Below are positions 15,996 through 24,585 of a stretch of DNA of 64,000 bases, one piece after another (the first letter of the stretch is position 1; each line of letters starts with the position of its first letter). The notes below the pieces were generated by a model. The model did not search any database. It was not told the origin of the DNA and was given only the letters and a program-made list of their open reading frames with translations. The stretch is from Fonticula alba ATCC 38817 (lineage: Eukaryota; Protista; Nucleariida), in the NCBI GenBank assembly GCA_000388065.2, contig KB932201.1. One strand, 5' to 3'. The position numbers and the translations under genes are program-made.

Positions 15996-18900
15996 ATGTC
16001 CCCCCCGTCCCTGGTCACTGCCGGTGCCGGCGACGGCTCCACCTCTGCCGGACGCGTGCGTTGTCTCCGGGCTGCCCCGATTGTCCACTAGCCTCTCGCA
16101 TGGCCGACTAACCTCGCCACCTGTTTCCCCCGACCAGGTCATTGTCCACCAGGGGTACCTCGAGAAGAAGAGCAACTCCTATCGGGTATGTCTACGTTTC
16201 ACTGCCTTTGCCCCCTTGACATCCCTTCCGGCCCCTGTCTCCCTGTCTTTGCCCTTTCCACCCGATGGTCTCCCCCCCCCCCCCCCCCCCCCCCGTCCCC
16301 ACGCACACACATATTTGCCAGCCTTCTAACCCCTCATGTGATGGAAGAAATTCCAACGCCGGTGGTTCGTCCTCCACACGGCTCCCGGCGGGGCCGATGC
16401 GCGGCTGTCCTACTTCGAGAGTGAGGCCAAGGCTGCCGCCCTGGTGTCGGCCATGGGGTCCGGCTCGCACACCGGCGCCGGTGAGCCCCTCTCCCCCCTG
16501 GGCAGCTCCTCCTCCGCGTACAACCTGTCCAACCTGGATGACAGTGATTCCGACAGTGAGGACACCGGCAAGGATGGCGAGGGTGCCAGCGGCGGCATCC
16601 AGCTCCTGCCTATGGCTATGATTTGGCGAACCGGCCCGTCGGCTGGGCCGGGAATTCCTTCCTTCAAGCTGTCGTCCAGCACCCGGGCATCGACCGCCGC
16701 ATCGACCGCTGCCACAACCTCCGGAATTGCCATCACCACCACACCGCCAGTCAACCAGAACCCCGAGCACACGGGTGTCATCCATGCCCATGGTGCCGGG
16801 TCCGGGGTGCCTTCCTTCGAGCTGGATGTCCTCGGCCGAACGTACTTCTTCCGGGCCTCGAGCGAAATGGTGCGCCTCCTTCCCCATGCCCTTTGCCTGC
16901 TCTTGTGCGCTCATCCTTACTCATCCCTCCCCCTTCTTCGCTCTTTGTCATTGTGGCTGTCCCCCCCCCCCTCTCCCCCTCTCCCTCCCCGGCCCATCAG
17001 GAAATGGATTCCTGGATTTCGGTCATTGCCCCGCTCATCCCCCAGCACCCAACCATTGCCTCGATTGCGCCGGTGCATCACCGGTCAGAGGATGTGTTCG
17101 GCACCGCCGACAAGCCGCTGGTCCTGTTCGCCGAGCTGGCTGGCAATCTGGACAAGCTGAGTGGCACTTTCAAGGTGTGTTTTGGCCTCTCTCCATTGGC
17201 GACTGATCCACTGTCCTTCCTTTGCCTTCTCTCTCTCTCTCTCTCTCTCTCCCCGCCTCTCTCTCTCTCTCTCTCTCTCCGTCTCTCTCTCTCCGTCTCT
17301 CTCTCTCTCTCCCCCCGCCTCTCTCTCTCTCTCTCTCCCCGCCTCTCTCTTTCCTTGCCCCGTCCCCCAATCTGACCCTGCTCTATCTTCCCATCCTTCC
17401 TCGATTGGGCATTGCTCTTTGTGCCCAGAACTGGAAAAGCCGCTACTTCGTGCTTCGCGGATACAAGCTCCTTTACTATGTGGACGAGTCTCTCCGAGAG
17501 CCGGTCGGGTCGATTGATTTGCACGATGCCACCCACGTGTCCATTGGCGCCCCGACCAGCAATGCCCCGAGCACCTCCGGCTCCAAGAACCTGATGCCGA
17601 GCATCCTGGGCTCCGTGCGCTTTGGTCGGTCGAAGTCCGGGTCCGGGTCCGGATCCAGCACCTCGCAGGCCCAGGTCCTGACCGTGTACACCCACAACCG
17701 CAGCTATCCCTTCCGGATTCCCTCGCCCAACTCCGGCATCGATGCCGATGTCTGGCTGTCGGCCCTGTCCGCGGCCGTGACCCGGGTTAGCCGATGCGCC
17801 GGCGAGCGTGCGCGTGTGTGGGGCATCACCTGGGACCCCAAGCGCCGGACAACCCTCTTCCTGCCAACCATCAGCACCCCGGCGCACTACCTCGCCGCCA
17901 AGGCCACCGCTTCTGATCTCAACAAGCGCAGCACCCTTACTGGCTTCAATTCCATCCGGGCTTCGACCATTGGGCTGGGTGTGTCAGCCAGTTCCCCGAT
18001 CAAGGAGGCATCTTCGCCAACCTCGCCAGCTAAGGAGCCTGCGGTGTCGGCTTCGCCGGTGGTCACTTCCCCCCCGGAGCCAGTCGCCTCGGAGCCAGCC
18101 GTCCCGGAGCCAGCCGTCCCGGAGCCAACCGTCCCGGAGCCAGAAGCCGATGTCGTCTTTGCCCCTGCCGTCCAGGCCCTGGAGCCCAGCACGGCCGAGG
18201 AGGCTCCCGCAACCTCGAGTGCCGCGCCAAGCTCCGACCTCACGACCGCCCCCCTGCCGATCAAGCAGCCCACTGCTCCGGATTTCGGGCGCCAGGCCTC
18301 CAGTGACCTGGACATGCTGATTGCCTCGCTGACTCCCACCGCCGGGGCTGGTACCCCCCCACCGCCGGCCATCACCCTCCCCGTGGAGTCCCTGCGGTCC
18401 GAGCACACCAGCCAGACCATTGCTTCGCCGATTCCGGATGCCGCGCTGCCCACCCCTCCACAGAGTGCATCCCTCCTGCCTCCCCCGCATCCCCTTGGCC
18501 CGGCGGGGTCGCGCGTGTCATTTGTCGGCGGAGCGGCCCTGCCCTCGCCGCTATCGGGACCGGCTCTCACCAACGACGGGGCCTCCACTGCTGCTGGTCT
18601 GCCTCAAAAGCCGTCCTCAGTGACGGCGACATCGCCAGACGGCTACATCTCCGTGGATCCGCTGCAGAGCCTGTCCGGCAACGGCTTCGATGAGTCGCTC
18701 ATTGCCCTGATCAACCCTGGTGCTGGGCCGGCTCTGCCGGCGCCGTTGCCGGCACCACTGCCTCCCGCCCTCGAGGAGGCCCAGTCGCCTGCCGAATCGA
18801 CCGATCCTGCGGCCGATCCTGCGGCCGATCCTGCGGTCGACCCTGCGGCCGATCCTGCGGCCGACCCTGATGCGATTCCTGACTCCGAGGATGCCAGCGA

Positions 18901-20943
18901 GCTGGTCGAAGAGCCGGCCGAGGAGGTCACCGTGGAGGCCATCCCCCTGTCGGATGTGCCGACAGACGCCCTGCTGTCGCTGGTCATCCTGCAGGTGTCC
19001 CTTCGCCTGCCGGGAACTCTCTTCGATGGTGATGTCTCCTCGGTGCCCGGTGGCTCCTGCCTGGAAGTGAGCTCGTCGCATATGGATTCCCCGGCGCAGG
19101 GGTTCTTCGACTCGTTGGCTATCCCCTCGCACCTGGGTGCTTTCCCGCGGGCGGCCCTTCGCCAGACCATCCCCGATGGGGCCCTTGTCGAGGCGGACCT
19201 AACTCTGGCCTTTATGGAGCTCTGGACCCGCATCGCGTGGGGTGCGTATGGGGTTCCCTCTGCGCGGCCCTTCCTCCCCCCCCCCCCGTCGGGGGCCTGT
19301 TTGTGCTGCTTTCCTTTCGCCCCTTTCCCCTCTCCCCTCCGAGGCTGACCCCCCTATCCCTGCCACAGATCCCCAGACCTTTGCCACGTTGCTGGTGGAT
19401 CATAGCACCAAGCTCGGTGAGGTGACTGGTGCCCCGGGCTGTGTGAGTTTCTTGACACAGGTGGCGCTGGCTGGGTACATCCTCCAGTGGCCGATCGCCG
19501 AGCCGGACTACCACACCCCGGCCCTGGTGGCGATCACCTTGTTGCTGATGCTCCTGGCTCGTGGGTCTCTCGGCGTCGCGGACTCGCGACTGGAGAGCCT
19601 GCTCCCGGCGTCGGCTTTCTTGGCCGTTCTGCGCCCGGTGATGTCCTTCTTCCCGGCGTGTTCCTTCCAGCCGGCCGCCCTACTTGCGACGCCCCTGACC
19701 CCGGCTACAGTGGTCATCTTCCTGGACTTGTTGCTGTCCATCGATCTGTCCGATTCCGGCGCGTCGTCGTTGGCTGAGCGTGCGTTCATCCGTCCTCTTT
19801 GCCTTTCTCATCGGGCTTTGTTTCTTCCTTTCCTTCCTTCCTCTTCTCCTCCTTCTTGTTCTTCTTCCTCTTCCCCTGTACCCACCCACTCATGTCCCTT
19901 GTTTCGGCCGCTTCCCTGTTCTTAGTCTATCCCTCGGTCACCGGGGCGGACTTCGCCCGGAGCACGGTTGCCTGCTTCCAGGCGACTTCGACCTCGGTCC
20001 GGCGCTTCACCGGGGTGGCGGCCGCCATCGAGGCTCTCGGGGCCATCTCGGCACTGCGCCTGTTGAGAGCCCTGCTTCCCCATAACTCCGACTCGGGGGA
20101 GATCCGTGCCCTGAGCACCGGGCTCGGTCAGCAGCTGTCTCCCTCGTCGCTGTCCTGGTGGTGGCTTGAGCCATCCGATCAGCTGGGCGCCCCGGCTGGC
20201 GCGGATGAGGAGGACGACGAGGAGGGGGCTCCCTGCCTGCAGGAGGCACTGGCCTCTTCGCTTGGCGCGGGCCTGCCCATTCTCTTTGGCTATTTTGCCT
20301 CGCCAACTGCTTGCATCCTGGCCACCAAGGATTTGTTCGACCCGCCATCGGCCTTCGGCAAGTTCGGCCTCGAGCTTGTTGCCTGCATCATTCGGCCGCT
20401 GTTTGATGGGGATTCCGTCCTCTCGGGCGATGTGGCCATGGATGACGTGTGTGCCGCGCTGGAGGCGGCTCTTCGCGCAAGCGTGGCCCTCTTGACGGCC
20501 TTCCCCCCGGGAGCGTCCCCAGGGGACAATTTTGCCAGCTGGCTTTTCGGAGCCATGTCCAAGCCGGCCACCGGGTCCGATCCCTCGAGCGATCCGATGT
20601 CGGCCCGGCGCAAGTGGGCTCTGGAGGCGGTATCCATCACTCGTGTGCTGGTGGCCCCGGTGCTGGTGGCCGGCGCCTTGCAGATTGGCGGCGCCACGGC
20701 TTCGGAGGACATGGACGTCTTGGCGGCCGCCCTCCAGGCCGACACGCCCCTGGTGCACCTGGTCCCAAGCGCGCTAAATGCCATCCGCCGGTCGCTTCAG
20801 CGGGCCGGGTGCCTTGAGCCGCTGGTGGACATTCTCGCCGCTCCGCCGGGCTATTGTCACATTCATGATACCACCGGTGAACTGTTGGCCCGCGCGACTG
20901 AAGCCTTGCTGTGGTTCTTGGAGGAGGGTGCGTTCTCTTTCCC

Positions 20944-20993
<50 letters not shown>

Positions 20994-23316
20994 GTCTCCA
21001 TATCCTGATCAGCCCCGAGCCCTGTCTTCTCGCCTGTCTGACCCTTTTGTCCTTCCTTTCTCCTCCCTGCAATTCCATCCTCGACCCGGGCCGTTGCTCC
21101 TGCTCTTGCTGTTGCCATCGTACACAGAGCTGTCCACGCGCGAGCTGATTCGCAGCAATGCGGCCAAGTTCCTGGTTGAGCAGTTGGCCGCCTGCTCACA
21201 CGCTGGCAGCGCTGCACTGGCCGACTCGCCGACCAGCGCCGCGGCCAATGTCACTCCTGCGCAGGCGGCTAACCTCTGGCGGCAGCGCCGGGTAGCTGGA
21301 GCCGCCGTGGCGGCCCTCTGCCGGCTGACATCGGCGGATGACTCGTCTCGCCAGGCGGTCCTGCGGGCTGGGCGCCACCGGCTGCTTCTGACCATGCTGT
21401 CGAATGCGGTGGCCCAGGCGCCGGTGCGCTTGGCACACCGGGACCCGGAGACCGGCTTTGGTCTTTGGGCACCGGGGCACTTCACCCTGGGCCAGGACCG
21501 GGTACCGGGCCCTGCCAATGGGGGGGACAGCCTTGGGGCTGGGTTCGCCACATGCGACACGGCCACCACCCTGTACCGGGCGGTGGAGTTGCTGGGCAAC
21601 CTGGCCCACGATGCGGATCCCATTCGTTTGTTGGATGCAGCCGATGCCCCGGGGATTCTAATGACCGTCCTCGCCCGGTTCCATGGCGGACAGGCGGTTG
21701 ACGGCGGCGGCGGCGGCGGCGGCGCCGAGGGTCCTGGCGACCGGGCGCCGGCCTATCGTGATGAAGAGCTGGCTCTGGCTGCGGCGGTGGCCCTGCACAA
21801 TCTGTCCCTGGACCCGGTGGCTCGGGCATCGCTCCATCGTGATGGGGCCTTCGGGCCACTGGTGGCCTTGGCCTGCCTCCGGGCGGATCTCCTGCCGGAG
21901 GTGGGAACCGCCGGGGCGACCGAGGTGCCCAAGCGCGAGCGCGGTGTCTGCGCCGGGCCCAGCCCGGCACGCACCGTGCAGCGCCTGCTACTCCGTGTGT
22001 TGCTGAATGTGTGCCAGGAGCCGCAGCATCTGGTGGAGTTGTACTGCCTGGCGGCGCATGGGGCCATCGGCCGGGTGGCCGATGCGGCCACCGCCCTCCC
22101 GAACCCGGGGGATGTAGATGAGGAGTTGGCCGACATTTCCGCCGTGTCGACCTACCTCCTGGCGGCGGTGAGTGCCATTACCCCGGAGGATCTGGCCGCA
22201 CATGCGGACGCCAATGAGGAGGGCGACACGCAGGAGGCCGGTGACGCGGATCTGGATGACGCGCCCGAGTCGGGCAAGGTACGTCATTGCTTTTGGCCCG
22301 TGTGCCATCGCCTCTGCTGGTGTGGGTTTCTCTTGCTCCCTCGTCCGTCTCCATTCTGACTGTCGGTCCCGTGTGCGGCTCCGCGTGTGTAGCTCTGGCT
22401 CCGACTGTCCTACAGCGGGACCACTCGCATGGCAACCATTCGCCGGCCGACCGCGGATCGGCCTCTGCGCAAGGCACATCTGGATGCGGTGGCCCGGCAG
22501 CGCTTCGGATCGGCCACGGCCGGCGTGTCGGCCGGGCGCATGGTCTTCTGGCACTGCGACTCCGAGGGAACGGAGCTGGCCATCGCGGCCGACGACGAGG
22601 CGGCCTACGTGTCGGAGATCCTGCTGGCCGGCGTGGCCGGGAGTGATGCCGATGCTCGGCTGACCTTGTCTCTGCGGTTGGCCATTCAGCCGCCAGGGGC
22701 CGGGGATTCGGACGATCCGGGGGCCCCGCCGCCCCCGTCCCTGGAGGCGGCCCCTCAGCGTGGGCGCCTGTTGGACGAGCTCCGGTTGATCTCCTCCATG
22801 GCCTCCAAGGGCGAGGAGGTGGCCACTGGTGTGATGGTTCCCCCGACCGGGGCGGTCACCTCGGCCTTTGGGCTGAAGAAGGTGGACCATGAGCAGATCG
22901 CTCGCGAGCGTGACGAGCGCCGTCGCCGCGAGAACCCGGTCGAGGCCCAACGCCAGGACATGTTGGCGTCCATCCGTCTGAAGGCCGCGCAGGCCGGCGA
23001 CGGGGACCTCTCGATCACCGACGCCGCGGCTGCCGTGGGAGTGAAGCTTCGCTCGGTCGAGCGCCACGCGCCTAAGCCAGTCTCCGATCCCCACGAGAGC
23101 AGTACGTTCTGCCGCCCTTTACTATGCTCTTCCTTCCCCCGGCAAGGGAGAAGACACATGAAGCTAACCTCCCCCTCCTCTCCCCTTCTCCCCTCCTCCC
23201 CGGCAGATTCTCTGATGCTGAATGTCGAGGCAGCCCGCCGGAGGATGGCCATCGCCGACGATCGCTACCACAACTCCTCCTCGTCAGACAGTGATTCCGG
23301 TGAGGATGACTGGTAG
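15996..23316 (+). CDS. Large multidomain protein: PH-PH, Pro-rich, helical/ARM repeats, PB1, 2x WH2-like, C, A(W); putative Arp2/3 nucleation-promoting factor (~1999 aa)
   Basis: Ten exons 15996-16055, 16138-16185, 16348-16869, 17001-17174, 17429-19241, 19369-19779, 19926-20927, 21128-22278, 22393-23101, 23207-23316 total 6000 nt in frame. PH1 HQGYLEKK..KFQRRWFVL..EMDSWISVI. PH2 GNLDKL..NWKSRYFVLRGYKLLYY..DVWLSAL. C-terminus SLMLNVEAARRRMAIA..SSSSDSDSGEDDW*. The 5' start is the least certain part. Confidence 0.8.
18074..18142 (+). repeat. Coding 15-nt tandem repeat (EPAVP-type)
   Basis: CGGAGCCAGCCGTCC-like units, about 4.5 copies, in exon 5 of the PH/WCA gene. Confidence 0.85.
18801..18868 (+). 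repeat. Coding 12-nt tandem repeat (DPAA x5)
   Basis: GATCCTGCGGCC units, about 5.5 copies. Confidence 0.9.
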
Positions 23317-24585
23317 TCTGAGGATGTGCGCTTCCCCTTTTCTCTCTCTCTCTCTCTCTCTCTCCCCCTCTTGAGGGTGGTTCCATCTCTACTCTTGTCT
23401 GTCGCTTTCCCGTGTCCCGTTTAGGCTCAGAATATACAGTTTTATGACTCCGGTGACTCGGTNNNNNNNNNNTCTCTACTCTTGTCTGTCGCTTTCCCGT
23501 GTCCCGTTTAGGCTCAGAATATACAGTTTTATGACTCCGGTGACTCGGTCCCTCCCCCCTTGTCCTGTCTCGCTACTCTGTCATTCCATCCCCGCCTGGC
23601 AATCCCGCCTCTCTCTCTCTCTTGGTCAATGTCGTGCCATTTTTTTGAGTCTACCTCGCGACTTGCTCGGGGGGGGGGGGGGGGGGGGCGGAATCTCGAT
23701 CGCTCAAGGCGGGGGGAGGAGCGGGGGTGCATGCATTCCGCGCAACACAATCACGTGCGTGATCATGCGCCTCATCGTGGCGTGCCTCGGGCGCGGAATG
23801 CGCGCATCCCCGGAGATGGCCGTATGGCACTCCGCCCGAACACACTGCCCTGCGTCGGGCGTCTGTGGAGGGGAGGGGGGGGGGGGGGTGCTTGCCGGCT
23901 ATTGACTAACTCTTTGGGAAAAGACCAACACCCCCGGCAAGGGTCCCGACCTACAGGGGAGAGCCCGGGCATTCCTGGCTATGGGCTCCGCCAGTCTCCG
24001 CGGGGGGAGGGGGCAGGGGTGACATTCTCCCAGGGCGCCATCCCCGTTGATGGCGGTGGTGGTGGCGGTGGCGGTGGTTGAACGCCGCCCACTCTTTATC
24101 CCCCCGCTCCTGGCGATGTTGGGCTTCCTCGGGCGAGGGCCTCTGACAGGGACGCCTCCCTCTCGGTCCGAGAACAGGGCCTCTGTTGTCCCTCTGCGTT
24201 TTCTTATCGGGGTGNNNNNNNNNNNNNNNNNNNNNNNNNNNNNNNNNNNNNNNNNNNNNNNNNNNNNNNNNNNNNNNNNNNNNNNNNNNNNNNNNNNNNN
24301 NNNNNNNNNNNNNNNNNNNNNNNNNNNNNNNNNNNNNNNNNNNNNNNNNNNNNNNNNNNNNNNNNNNNNNNNNNNNNNNNNNNNNNNNNNNNNNNNNNNN
24401 NNNNNNNNNNNNNNNNNNNNNNNNNNNNNNNNNNNNNNNNNNNNNNNNNNNNNNNNNNNNNNNNNNNNNNNNNNNNNNNNNNNNNNNNNNNNNNNNNNNN
24501 NNNATTCCCTCCTCTTCCACCCCACCCCCCCTTTCTTTCTTTCTCTCCCTCTCTCCATCCTCCCCCCCCCCCCTCCCATACAACC

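What the first reader, a model, noticed from the sequence alone, without database searches (positions are those of the whole stretch)
15996..23316. Candidate new class of Arp2/3 nucleation-promoting factor: PH-PH-ARM-PB1-WH2-WH2-CA (~2000 aa)
Seen: ten exons join in frame into one protein ending GVKLRSVE..SNSLMLNVEAARRRMAIA..SSSSDSDSGEDDW*. That is an LKKV-type motif, a hydrophobic-RR-x-AI central helix, and an acidic tail with terminal Trp. Upstream are two PH domains, a Pro-rich region, about 6 ARM-like repeats and a PB1-like domain. The ORF track splits this into unrelated pieces. Established: this WH2-C-A ending defines WASP, WAVE/SCAR, WASH and WHAMM/JMY, which carry WH1/CRIB, SHD, WAHD or coiled-coil N-termini; WAWH and WAML are further proposed families. 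None of those N-terminal domains is visible here, and I know of no NPF with ARM plus PB1. Inference: a phosphoinositide-recruited, scaffold-coupled Arp2/3 activator.
Basis: partly seen in the sequence, partly recalled or inferred. Interest (0 to 1): 0.9.

Follow-up and report, generated by a model that had tools for sequence, protein, structure and literature searches.

The report
Orphan WASP-like actin nucleation factor candidate
A real, expressed 1999-residue gene of the amoeba Fonticula alba ends in motifs resembling the tail that WASP-family proteins use to activate the Arp2/3 actin nucleator, behind an N-terminus found in no described activator; no activity has been tested and no relative was found.

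Summary
Ten GT-AG exons (15996-23316, + strand) join into a 6000-nt ORF. Two 2012 RNA assemblies each carry one spliced contig with exactly the junctions predicted for introns 4 to 9. The 1999-aa product is identical to the public model Fonticula alba H696_00210 (XP_009492327.1, "hypothetical protein").

- **Two PH domains:** confirmed by Pfam.
- **Tail:** the published WH2-helix pattern occurs exactly twice in the protein, both in the last 150 residues. After them come LKKV or LRSV, an RRRMAI helix and a Ser/Asp-rich end in DDW.
- **Weak points of the tail:** the WH2 linkers are 29 and 23 aa (4-10 is usual). Pfam WH2 does not hit. The strict published C pattern is not met.
- **PB1:** rests on language-model features (0.89) and an OPCA-like motif.
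- **ARM:** rests on an all-alpha, low-confidence model.

No homologue turned up in 1.84 billion representative proteins, three word-based searches or a metagenome scan, so "class" is unsupported; this is a single-species orphan. No paper in the library names it.

I read it as a candidate new variant of WASP-family activator. The same stretch was also noted from an overlapping window of this genome (s1-065377, s1-066830).

The parts
15996..23316 (+). Whole gene: 10 exons, 9 GT-AG introns, 6000-nt CDS including the stop (23314-23316); Fonticula alba H696_00210
   Evidence: model; spliced RNA contigs; identical to the public 1999-aa protein
16138..17036 (+). PH domain 1 (aa ~21-222), spread over exons 2-4 and interrupted by a ~130-aa Ser/Gly/Thr-rich insert
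   Evidence: Pfam PH / PH_20 / PH_3 / PH_6 stretches at aa 18-60 and 149-219
17139..17815 (+). PH domain 2 (aa ~257-397), exons 4-5, carrying a K-x6-K-x2-K-S-R-Y-F phosphoinositide-type basic signature at aa 262-275
   Evidence: Pfam PF00169, best stretch aa 257-315; regex hit
17882..19144 (+). Pro/Ser/Ala-rich low-complexity linker (aa ~420-840) with PxxP runs (aa 491-507) and PPPP (aa 578)
   Evidence: Composition per 100 aa and regex
19202..22278 (+). All-alpha region of ~870 aa (aa ~860-1727), a possible ARM/HEAT-like solenoid; no sequence relative anywhere
   Evidence: AF2 single-sequence model with ~40 helices, pLDDT 41. Foldseek top hits are beta-catenin and designed ARM proteins, but TM <= 0.25. 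No Pfam hit, no internal repeat by BLAST, only itself found among 1.84e9 representatives
22393..22689 (+). PB1-like beta-grasp candidate (aa 1728-1826) with an OPCA-like acidic motif DSEGTELAIAADDE (aa 1783-1796)
   Evidence: Atlas features: 28 of 100 hits are PB1 clusters, best 0.89 with 173 shared features (weaker). Regex. Pfam PB1 not hit; the AF2 model is uninformative
22726..22737 (+). PPPP (aa 1839-1842), 10 residues before the first WH2-like helix
   Evidence: Regex
22768..22884 (+). WH2-like motif 1: helix LLDELR (aa 1853-1858), a 29-aa linker, then LKKV (aa 1888-1891)
   Evidence: Published WH2 pattern from PMC3298513 applied; AF2 predicts a helix at aa 1850-1855
22960..23058 (+). WH2-like motif 2: helix MLASIR (aa 1917-1922), a 23-aa linker, then LRSV (aa 1946-1949; compare LKSV in N-WASP's second WH2)
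   Evidence: N-WASP sequence read in PMC6624021
23212..23253 (+). C-like amphipathic basic helix LMLNVEAARRRMAI (aa 1966-1979), exon 10
   Evidence: Relaxed C pattern met, strict pattern not met; AF2 helix at aa 1960-1985; the only [KR][KR][VILM]A[VILM] in the protein
23254..23313 (+). A-like tail ADDRYHNSSSSDSDSGEDDW (aa 1980-1999): 7 acidic residues, 6 Ser, terminal Trp
   Evidence: The only [DE][DE]W in the protein; S-x-x-[DE] sites at aa 1988 and 1994

Best explanation
H696_00210 is a lineage-restricted, WASP-family-like (class I) candidate activator of the Arp2/3 complex in Fonticula alba. Shown: it is a single spliced mRNA, it has two N-terminal PH domains, and it has a C-terminal set of V-V-C-A-like motifs in canonical order. 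Inferred mechanism: PH2 carries the K...K-x-R basic signature of phosphoinositide-binding PH domains and would bring the protein to PIP-rich membrane. The short PPPP and the two WH2-like helices would deliver actin monomers. The RRRMAI helix and the Ser/Asp-rich tail ending in Trp would engage Arp2/3 as WASP/WAVE C-A regions do, and the serines could be CK2-type phosphorylation sites as in WASP and WAVE2 (own knowledge). The PB1-like domain directly upstream would oligomerise or heterodimerise the tail, which for WASP-family VCA strongly raises potency (own knowledge: Padrick et al. 2008/2011). The ~870-aa helical region would act as a scaffold and perhaps as an autoinhibitory dock for the V/C helices. 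That would be analogous to GBD-C in WASP, Sra1-VCA in the WAVE complex, or DID-DAD in formins.
For: One transcript with every tested junction as predicted and identity to the public model. PH x2. The WH2-helix regex derived from 1080 WASP-family WH2s (PMC3298513) hits exactly twice in 1999 aa, at 1853 and 1917. Shuffles give a mean of 0.10 hits per protein, and 0 of 2000 place two hits in the last 200 aa. The six-frame background of the window gives 5 hits in 128,000 aa. The only strict LKKV, the only RR[M]A[I] and the only [DE][DE]W of the tail follow in the canonical order V-V-C-A, and Trp is the last residue. The spacing from LRSV to the C helix is 16 aa, against 20 aa in N-WASP, whose second WH2 also reads LKSV (PMC6624021). 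PPPP lies just upstream. AF2 puts helices on the WH2-1 and C segments. PB1-like features score 0.89 with 173 shared features.
Against: No profile-level support: Pfam WH2 gives nothing at E<=10, and phmmer against PDB finds no VCA chain. The WH2 helix-to-LKKV linkers (29 and 23 aa) are far outside the 4-10 aa known. The strict three-hydrophobic C pattern is not met; Ala or Arg sits where the third hydrophobic residue should be. No orthologue exists, so conservation of the motifs cannot be checked. The main Pro-rich region lies ~1100 aa upstream of the tail rather than adjacent to it. The presence of Arp2/3 and of canonical NPFs in this genome was not checked here. No biochemical data exist.
Confidence: 0.55

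Rival explanations
1. The tail binds Arp2/3 through its C-A part but does not activate it. The protein would be a membrane-bound recruiter, weak co-factor or competitor (in the way of Arpin's acidic tail or amoebozoan CARMIL's weak V+A), and the two 'WH2' helices would not bind actin productively because of their long linkers.
For: The A motif is the cleanest part. The WH2 linkers are 23-29 aa, and Pfam WH2 is negative. The strict C pattern is not met. Amoeba CARMILs show that PH + solenoid + V-like + A proteins exist (PMC5491179).
Against: Both WH2 helices fit the published six-residue pattern perfectly and each is followed by an LKKV-type motif. A basic amphipathic helix lies at the canonical distance before the acidic tail. 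Inhibitors such as Arpin lack V and C (own knowledge).
Confidence: 0.2
2. The tail motifs are coincidental or serve another partner. The protein would be a PH-anchored helical scaffold with a PB1-like module, working in polarity or signalling and unrelated to Arp2/3. The WH2-like helices could, for instance, be DAD-like autoregulatory peptides that dock on the helical region.
For: No profile or homology support for V, C or A. It is an orphan protein with much low-complexity sequence. The whole-protein Atlas neighbours are ELMO-type ARM+PH proteins, which use autoregulatory helices (score 0.80, a weak lead).
Against: The joint occurrence, order and terminal position of four independent motifs is very unlikely by chance. 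A terminal acidic Trp preceded by RR-hydrophobic-A-hydrophobic is the hallmark of Arp2/3 ligands (PMC3298513).
Confidence: 0.2
3. The gene model is an artefact that fuses two neighbouring genes: a PH/helical protein and a small PB1-WCA protein.
For: The contigs are assemblies, and the tool warns that a contig across two genes shows no single transcript.
Against: One contig in each of two samples is spliced at all tested junctions and keeps a single 6000-nt open frame. Intron 8 (22279-22392), which joins the two halves, is removed precisely and in frame. The public annotation is identical.
Confidence: 0.03

Closest known systems
N-WASP / WASP (WASP family, class I NPF)
   Same: Two tandem WH2-type helices (N-WASP ALLDQIR x2; here LLDELR and MLASIR). 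The second LKKV variant is LKSV in N-WASP and LRSV here. A 16-20 aa spacer follows, then an LM...basic...AI helix and an acidic tail with Trp at or near the end (PMC6624021). A short polyproline lies just upstream.
   Different: No WH1, basic region or CRIB/GBD. WH2 linkers are 23-29 aa instead of 4-5. The C helix is 1-2 residues longer and lacks the third hydrophobic position. The protein is four times larger, with PH-PH, ~870 aa of helices and a PB1-like module.
SCAR/WAVE
   Same: The C-A core RR-[IM]-A-[VI] followed by Ser/Asp-rich acid and D-W (WAVE sequence from my own memory, not checked with a tool). The Ser-rich acidic region resembles the CK2-phosphorylated WAVE2 tail (own knowledge).
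   Different: No SCAR homology domain, two V motifs instead of one, and no evidence of a regulatory complex.
WAWH and WAML (Kollmar et al. 2012, PMC3298513)
   Same: Both are precedents for VCA tails attached to non-canonical N-termini in amoeboid lineages. WAML couples a membrane-binding module (IMD) to VCA, as PH-PH would here.
   Different: WAWH is defined by a GBD and WAML by IMD + WAID. Neither is present here.
Amoebozoan CARMIL (Acan125 / Dictyostelium p116)
   Same: A large protein with an N-terminal PH domain, a long solenoid, a Pro-rich region, and verprolin-like plus acidic regions able to activate Arp2/3 (PMC5491179).
   Different: CARMIL's solenoid is LRR, whereas this region is predicted all-alpha. 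No CPI motif is present. CARMIL's V/A is internal, not a terminal V-V-C-A. There is no sequence similarity.
WISH/DIP/SPIN90 (Dip1) family
   Same: An Arp2/3 activator built on an armadillo-repeat domain (PMC12618257, PMC9168731). This shows that an alpha-solenoid can itself contact Arp2/3.
   Different: WDS proteins lack a WCA and activate without a mother filament. No Pfam SPIN90 match here, and the fold here is unresolved.
ELMO and Diaphanous-type autoregulated scaffolds
   Same: A PH + ARM-like helical region + ubiquitin-like or beta-grasp module. The whole-protein Atlas neighbours are ELMO clusters (0.80). A C-terminal amphipathic helix that could dock on the helical region (inference).
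   Different: The domain order differs. There are no ELMO, FH2 or DID Pfam hits, and the Atlas score is within the range that shuffled proteins reach.

Membership tests
WASP-family class I NPF (VCA-bearing) | [quoted passage not shown] | tested here: inconclusive
   The helix pattern is met twice (aa 1853, 1917). LKKV at 1888 and LRSV at 1946 are present, but the linkers are 29 and 23 aa. Pfam WH2 gives no hit at E<=10.
WASP-family class I NPF (VCA-bearing) | C (central) helix: three large hydrophobics spaced by three residues, an R/K doublet or triplet, then a closing hydrophobic residue | tested here: inconclusive
   The strict regex is not met at the tail. The relaxed form (two hydrophobics + RRR + M-A-I) is met at aa 1966-1979. 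AF2 predicts a helix there.
WASP-family class I NPF (VCA-bearing) | A: acidic C-terminus with Trp at or near the last residue | tested here: met
   ADDRYHNSSSSDSDSGEDDW*: 7 acidic residues, terminal W, and the only [DE][DE]W in the protein.
WASP-family class I NPF (VCA-bearing) | Proline-rich region upstream of V | tested here: inconclusive
   Only PPPP at aa 1839 lies adjacent. The large Pro-rich region (aa ~470-760) is ~1100 aa away.
WASP-family class I NPF (VCA-bearing) | Stimulates actin nucleation by Arp2/3 complex | not testable with these tools
   Needs a pyrene-actin or TIRF assay.
WASP, WAVE/SCAR, WASH, WHAMM/JMY, WAML, WAWH subfamilies | Subfamily-specific N-terminal domain (WH1 + GBD; SHD; WAHD1; WMD / coiled coil; IMD + WAID; GBD without WH1) | tested here: not met
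   The Pfam scan of the full protein and of its parts at E<=10 returns PH families plus one sub-threshold DinB_2 match (E 0.14), and none of these domains. No CRIB regex match.
PH domain | Match to Pfam PF00169 above the gathering score | tested here: met
   68.4 bits against a cut-off of 25.1, in three stretches covering two domains. PH2 carries the K..K.R basic signature.
PB1 domain | Match to the PB1 profile / beta-grasp fold with an OPCA motif or a conserved Lys | tested here: inconclusive
   Pfam PB1 is not hit. Atlas features score 0.89 with 173 shared features, and 28 of 100 hits are PB1 clusters. An OPCA-like DSEGTELAIAADDE is present. The AF2 model has pLDDT 45.
Armadillo repeat | Tandem ~42-aa three-helix repeats forming a superhelix | tested here: inconclusive
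   No Pfam ARM/HEAT hit and no internal repeats by BLAST. The AF2 model is all-alpha but has pLDDT 41. Foldseek top hits are beta-catenin and designed ARM proteins with E ~3e-4 but TM <= 0.25.
CARMIL | LRR domain and CPI motif LxHxTxxRPK | tested here: not met
   No CPI regex match and no LRR Pfam hit.
WISH/DIP/SPIN90 | SPIN90/Ldb17 leucine-rich (ARM) domain | tested here: not met
   No Pfam hit at E<=10 on aa 840-1730. The fold could not be resolved.

The most novel reading that the evidence does not exclude
A genuinely new, nucleariid-specific subfamily of WASP-type Arp2/3 activators. Phosphoinositide-binding PH domains and a PB1 oligomerisation module would replace the GTPase-binding or regulatory-complex logic of WASP and WAVE. 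Actin would be delivered by 'split' WH2 domains whose helix and LKKV parts are separated by 23-29-residue loops, a WH2 geometry not described before.
Probability: 0.3. Interest if true: 0.75.

Novelty: new variant of a known kind. Interest (0 to 1): 0.5.

Why it matters
WASP-family activators are classified by what is fused to a shared V-C-A tail, and each new N-terminus has revealed a new way of switching on branched actin assembly. Fonticula alba belongs to the sister lineage of fungi. It is an amoeboid, aggregative organism that can be cultured and imaged (PMC9097593).

An activator that couples PH-mediated lipid binding and PB1-mediated clustering directly to a WCA tail would be a compact, testable alternative to Cdc42-WASP or Rac-WAVE control. 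Its long-linker WH2 motifs would also test how much spacing the actin-WH2 interface tolerates.

Against that, the protein is so far confined to one species and has no biochemical support. Its general importance is therefore uncertain.

Tried and rejected
- **Pfam on the eight exon pieces and on the full protein and its parts**: only PH passes its cut-off. A DinB_2 match (E 0.047-0.14) is noise.
- **phmmer against PDB** with exon 9, exon 10, the joined tail and the helical region: only chance-level hits (uS11, Utp4, ArsR).
- **HMMER over 1.84e9 representatives** with aa 1345-1727 (the first job was lost): only itself.
- **Three word-indexed searches**, on regions 840-1999, 1724-1999 and 1-420: only itself. 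These searches are limited to proteins of 1100-3500 aa.
- **Metagenome locus scan**: 599 pattern matches, none confirmed.
- **AlphaFold2 without an alignment** on aa 1722-1999 and 860-1730: pLDDT 45 and 41, too poor to settle PB1 or ARM. Foldseek on the second model is treated only as a hint.
- **BLAST self-comparison for repeats**: nothing.
- **RNA runs X12 and X13** ('organism B'): no reads laid on the stretch, so they are uninformative.
- **Literature**: no paper in the library names this protein or a PH-PB1-WCA activator. The Fonticula paper PMC9097593 does not mention Arp2/3 or WASP.
- **Alternative splice choices considered and rejected:**
  - An acceptor at 22415 paired with the 22279 donor shifts the frame and is not seen in RNA.
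  - The ATG at 16100 is followed by a stop after three codons.
- **Not done:** I did not type reference WASP/WAVE sequences into tools for alignment. The comparison with N-WASP is by eye from PMC6624021.

Full report
**What is there**

The window is GC-rich (about 0.63-0.67 across the gene) eukaryotic DNA with short introns. On the + strand between 15996 and 23316 the open frames change register at places flanked by GT and AG. For each junction I enumerated donor/acceptor pairs that keep the frame open.

That gave ten exons: 15996-16055, 16138-16185, 16348-16869, 17001-17174, 17429-19241, 19369-19779, 19926-20927, 21128-22278, 22393-23101 and 23207-23316. The donors read GTGCGT, GTATGT, GTGCGC, GTGTGT or GTACGT. 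CTAAC branch-like sites are visible in the two introns I inspected for them (introns 1 and 2).

**Transcript evidence**

Four 2012 RNA runs of 'organism A' hold 85% of the sampled words of 17400-23340. That share is about what is expected if the introns are absent.

Laying X1 and X2 on 17345-23340 gave one contig per run, 6050 and 6073 nt long and 100% identical to the window. Each breaks at 19241/19369, 19779/19926, 20927/21128, 22278/22393 and 23101/23207.

The unaligned sequence just before 17427 is the end of exon 4. The contigs extend 800 and 823 nt further upstream, against 804 nt for spliced exons 1-4. So introns 4-9 are directly confirmed, and introns 1-3 are consistent by length. Two raw-read runs of 'organism B' contributed nothing.

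**Identity**

A HMMER search of 1.84 billion representative proteins with exon 8 (aa 1345-1727) returned a single protein, P0001. P0001 has 1999 aa and is identical to my model. It is Fonticula alba H696_00210 (XP_009492327.1, KCV72626.1, UniProt A0A058ZF96), named 'hypothetical protein' or 'PH domain-containing protein', and sits alone in its 90% cluster. The gene model is therefore already public. What is new is the reading of its tail.

**Domains**

- **PH domains.** Pfam on the full protein finds only PH (PF00169, E 9e-19, 68 bits) as two domains, each split by a low-complexity insert. PH2 carries K-x6-K-x2-K-S-R-Y-F (aa 262-275), the basic signature of phosphoinositide-binding PH domains (interpretation from established knowledge).
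- **Linker.** Residues ~420-840 are Pro/Ser/Ala-rich.
- **Helical region, aa ~860-1727.**
  - It has no Pfam hit and no PDB sequence relative.
  - It shows no internal repeat by BLAST.
  - AlphaFold2 without an alignment gives about 40 helices at pLDDT 41.
  - Foldseek ranks beta-catenin, designed armadillo proteins, Vac8 and HEAT proteins first, but with TM <= 0.26.
  - 'Alpha-solenoid, possibly ARM/HEAT-like' is a reasonable guess and no more.
- **PB1-like module, aa 1728-1826.**
  - It looks PB1-like to the Atlas language-model features. The best hit scores 0.89 with 173 shared features, and 28 of 100 hits are PB1 clusters. The rest are related beta-grasp oligomerisation modules such as CIDE-N, TDP-43_N and the Par3 N-terminus.
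  - It contains an OPCA-like DSEGTELAIAADDE.
  - Pfam PB1 is silent and the AF2 model (pLDDT 45) is uninformative.

**The tail**

Kollmar et al. [quoted passage not shown]

- **WH2 helices.** The helix part occurs exactly twice in the 1999 residues, LLDELR at 1853 and MLASIR at 1917. Shuffles average 0.10 hits per protein, and none of 2000 puts two hits in the last 200 residues. The six-frame translation of the whole window has 5 hits in 128,000 aa.
- **LKKV parts.** LLDELR is followed after 29 residues by LKKV. MLASIR is followed after 23 residues by LRSV; N-WASP's second WH2 reads LKSV (PMC6624021).
- **C-like helix.** Sixteen residues after LRSV comes LMLNVEAARRRMAI, the only RR-hydrophobic-A-hydrophobic in the protein.
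- **A-like tail.** The protein then ends ADDRYHNSSSSDSDSGEDDW, which holds its only [DE][DE]W, with Trp as the last residue.
- **Polyproline.** PPPP lies 10 residues before the first helix.
- **Predicted helices.** AF2 predicts helices on the WH2-1 and C segments.

The order V-V-C-A, the spacing to C and the terminal Trp are those of N-WASP.

**What does not fit**

- The linkers are two to three times longer than any described.
- Pfam WH2 and PDB phmmer searches find nothing.
- The strict C description (three hydrophobics at i, i+4, i+8) is not met, because Ala or Arg occupies the third position. The only strict match is a chance one at aa 1285 inside the helical region.
- The large Pro-rich region is far from the tail.
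- No relative was found. This covers the representative search, three word-indexed searches limited to proteins of 1100-3500 aa and a metagenome scan. Conservation, the best argument for short motifs, is therefore unavailable.

**Comparison with known systems**

No WH1, PBD/CRIB, SCAR, WASH, WHAMM/JMY or IMD domain is detectable. It is therefore not a member of WASP, WAVE, WASH, WHAMM/JMY, WAML or WAWH as those are defined (PMC3298513).

It works like a WASP-family tail on a new chassis.

The closest precedent for the overall plan is amoebozoan CARMIL, with a PH domain, a long solenoid, a Pro-rich region, and verprolin-like plus acidic regions that activate Arp2/3 (PMC5491179). This protein, however, has no CPI motif or LRR. 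Whole-protein Atlas neighbours are ELMO-type ARM+PH proteins at 0.80, which is only a lead.

**Mechanism proposed (inferred)**

- PH2, and perhaps PH1, target the protein to phosphoinositide-rich membrane.
- The PB1-like module clusters tails or links them to another PB1 protein.
- PPPP and the WH2 helices supply actin monomers.
- C-A engages Arp2/3.
- The helical region scaffolds, and may sequester the V/C helices until the protein is recruited.

I put this at 0.55. The rivals are an Arp2/3 binder without activating power (0.2), a coincidental or DAD-like tail on an unrelated scaffold (0.2), and a fused gene model (0.03).

**Verdict**

This is a single-species, unconserved candidate for a new variant of a known kind, not an established new class. 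No paper in the searchable library mentions the protein or this architecture.

The scan had already noted the same stretch from an overlapping window (s1-065377), and the split WH2 motifs separately (s1-066830). Interest is 0.5. The case is well defined and directly testable, but a further VCA-bearing chimera is not very surprising in a family that already includes WAML, WAWH and WHIMP (named among the papers found).

Noticed in passing
window 17225-17350 and 20945-20995: Long (CT)n / CTCTC-rich microsatellites fill introns 4 and 7. Read laying reported that reads seem cut at 20933-21006 because of the repeat.
   Followed up: no
window 22393-22416: A second, stronger-looking acceptor (CTACAG at 22415) lies 23 nt inside exon 9. 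Used with the 22279 donor it would shift the frame and remove the PB1-WCA part. The RNA contigs show only the 22392 acceptor, but contigs drop rare isoforms.
   Followed up: partly
P0001 aa 1893-1927 (window ~22888-22992): AF2 predicts one long, highly charged helix (HEQIARERDERRRRENPVEAQRQ...) running straight into the second WH2-like helix. It was the only part of the tail model with pLDDT of 70-85.
   Followed up: no
P0001 aa 60-190 (window ~16417-16809): PH1 is interrupted by a ~130-aa Ser/Gly/Thr/Asp-rich insert that includes DDSDSDSED. That is unusually large for a PH loop.
   Followed up: no
window 23463-23472 and 24215-24503: Assembly gaps (N runs) lie just downstream of the gene. The 3' neighbourhood is therefore incompletely assembled.
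   Followed up: no
one search run list: Twenty RNA runs of 2026 listed under 'same species label' (organism B) are a different organism code. The two that I tried held no read of this gene.
   Followed up: partly
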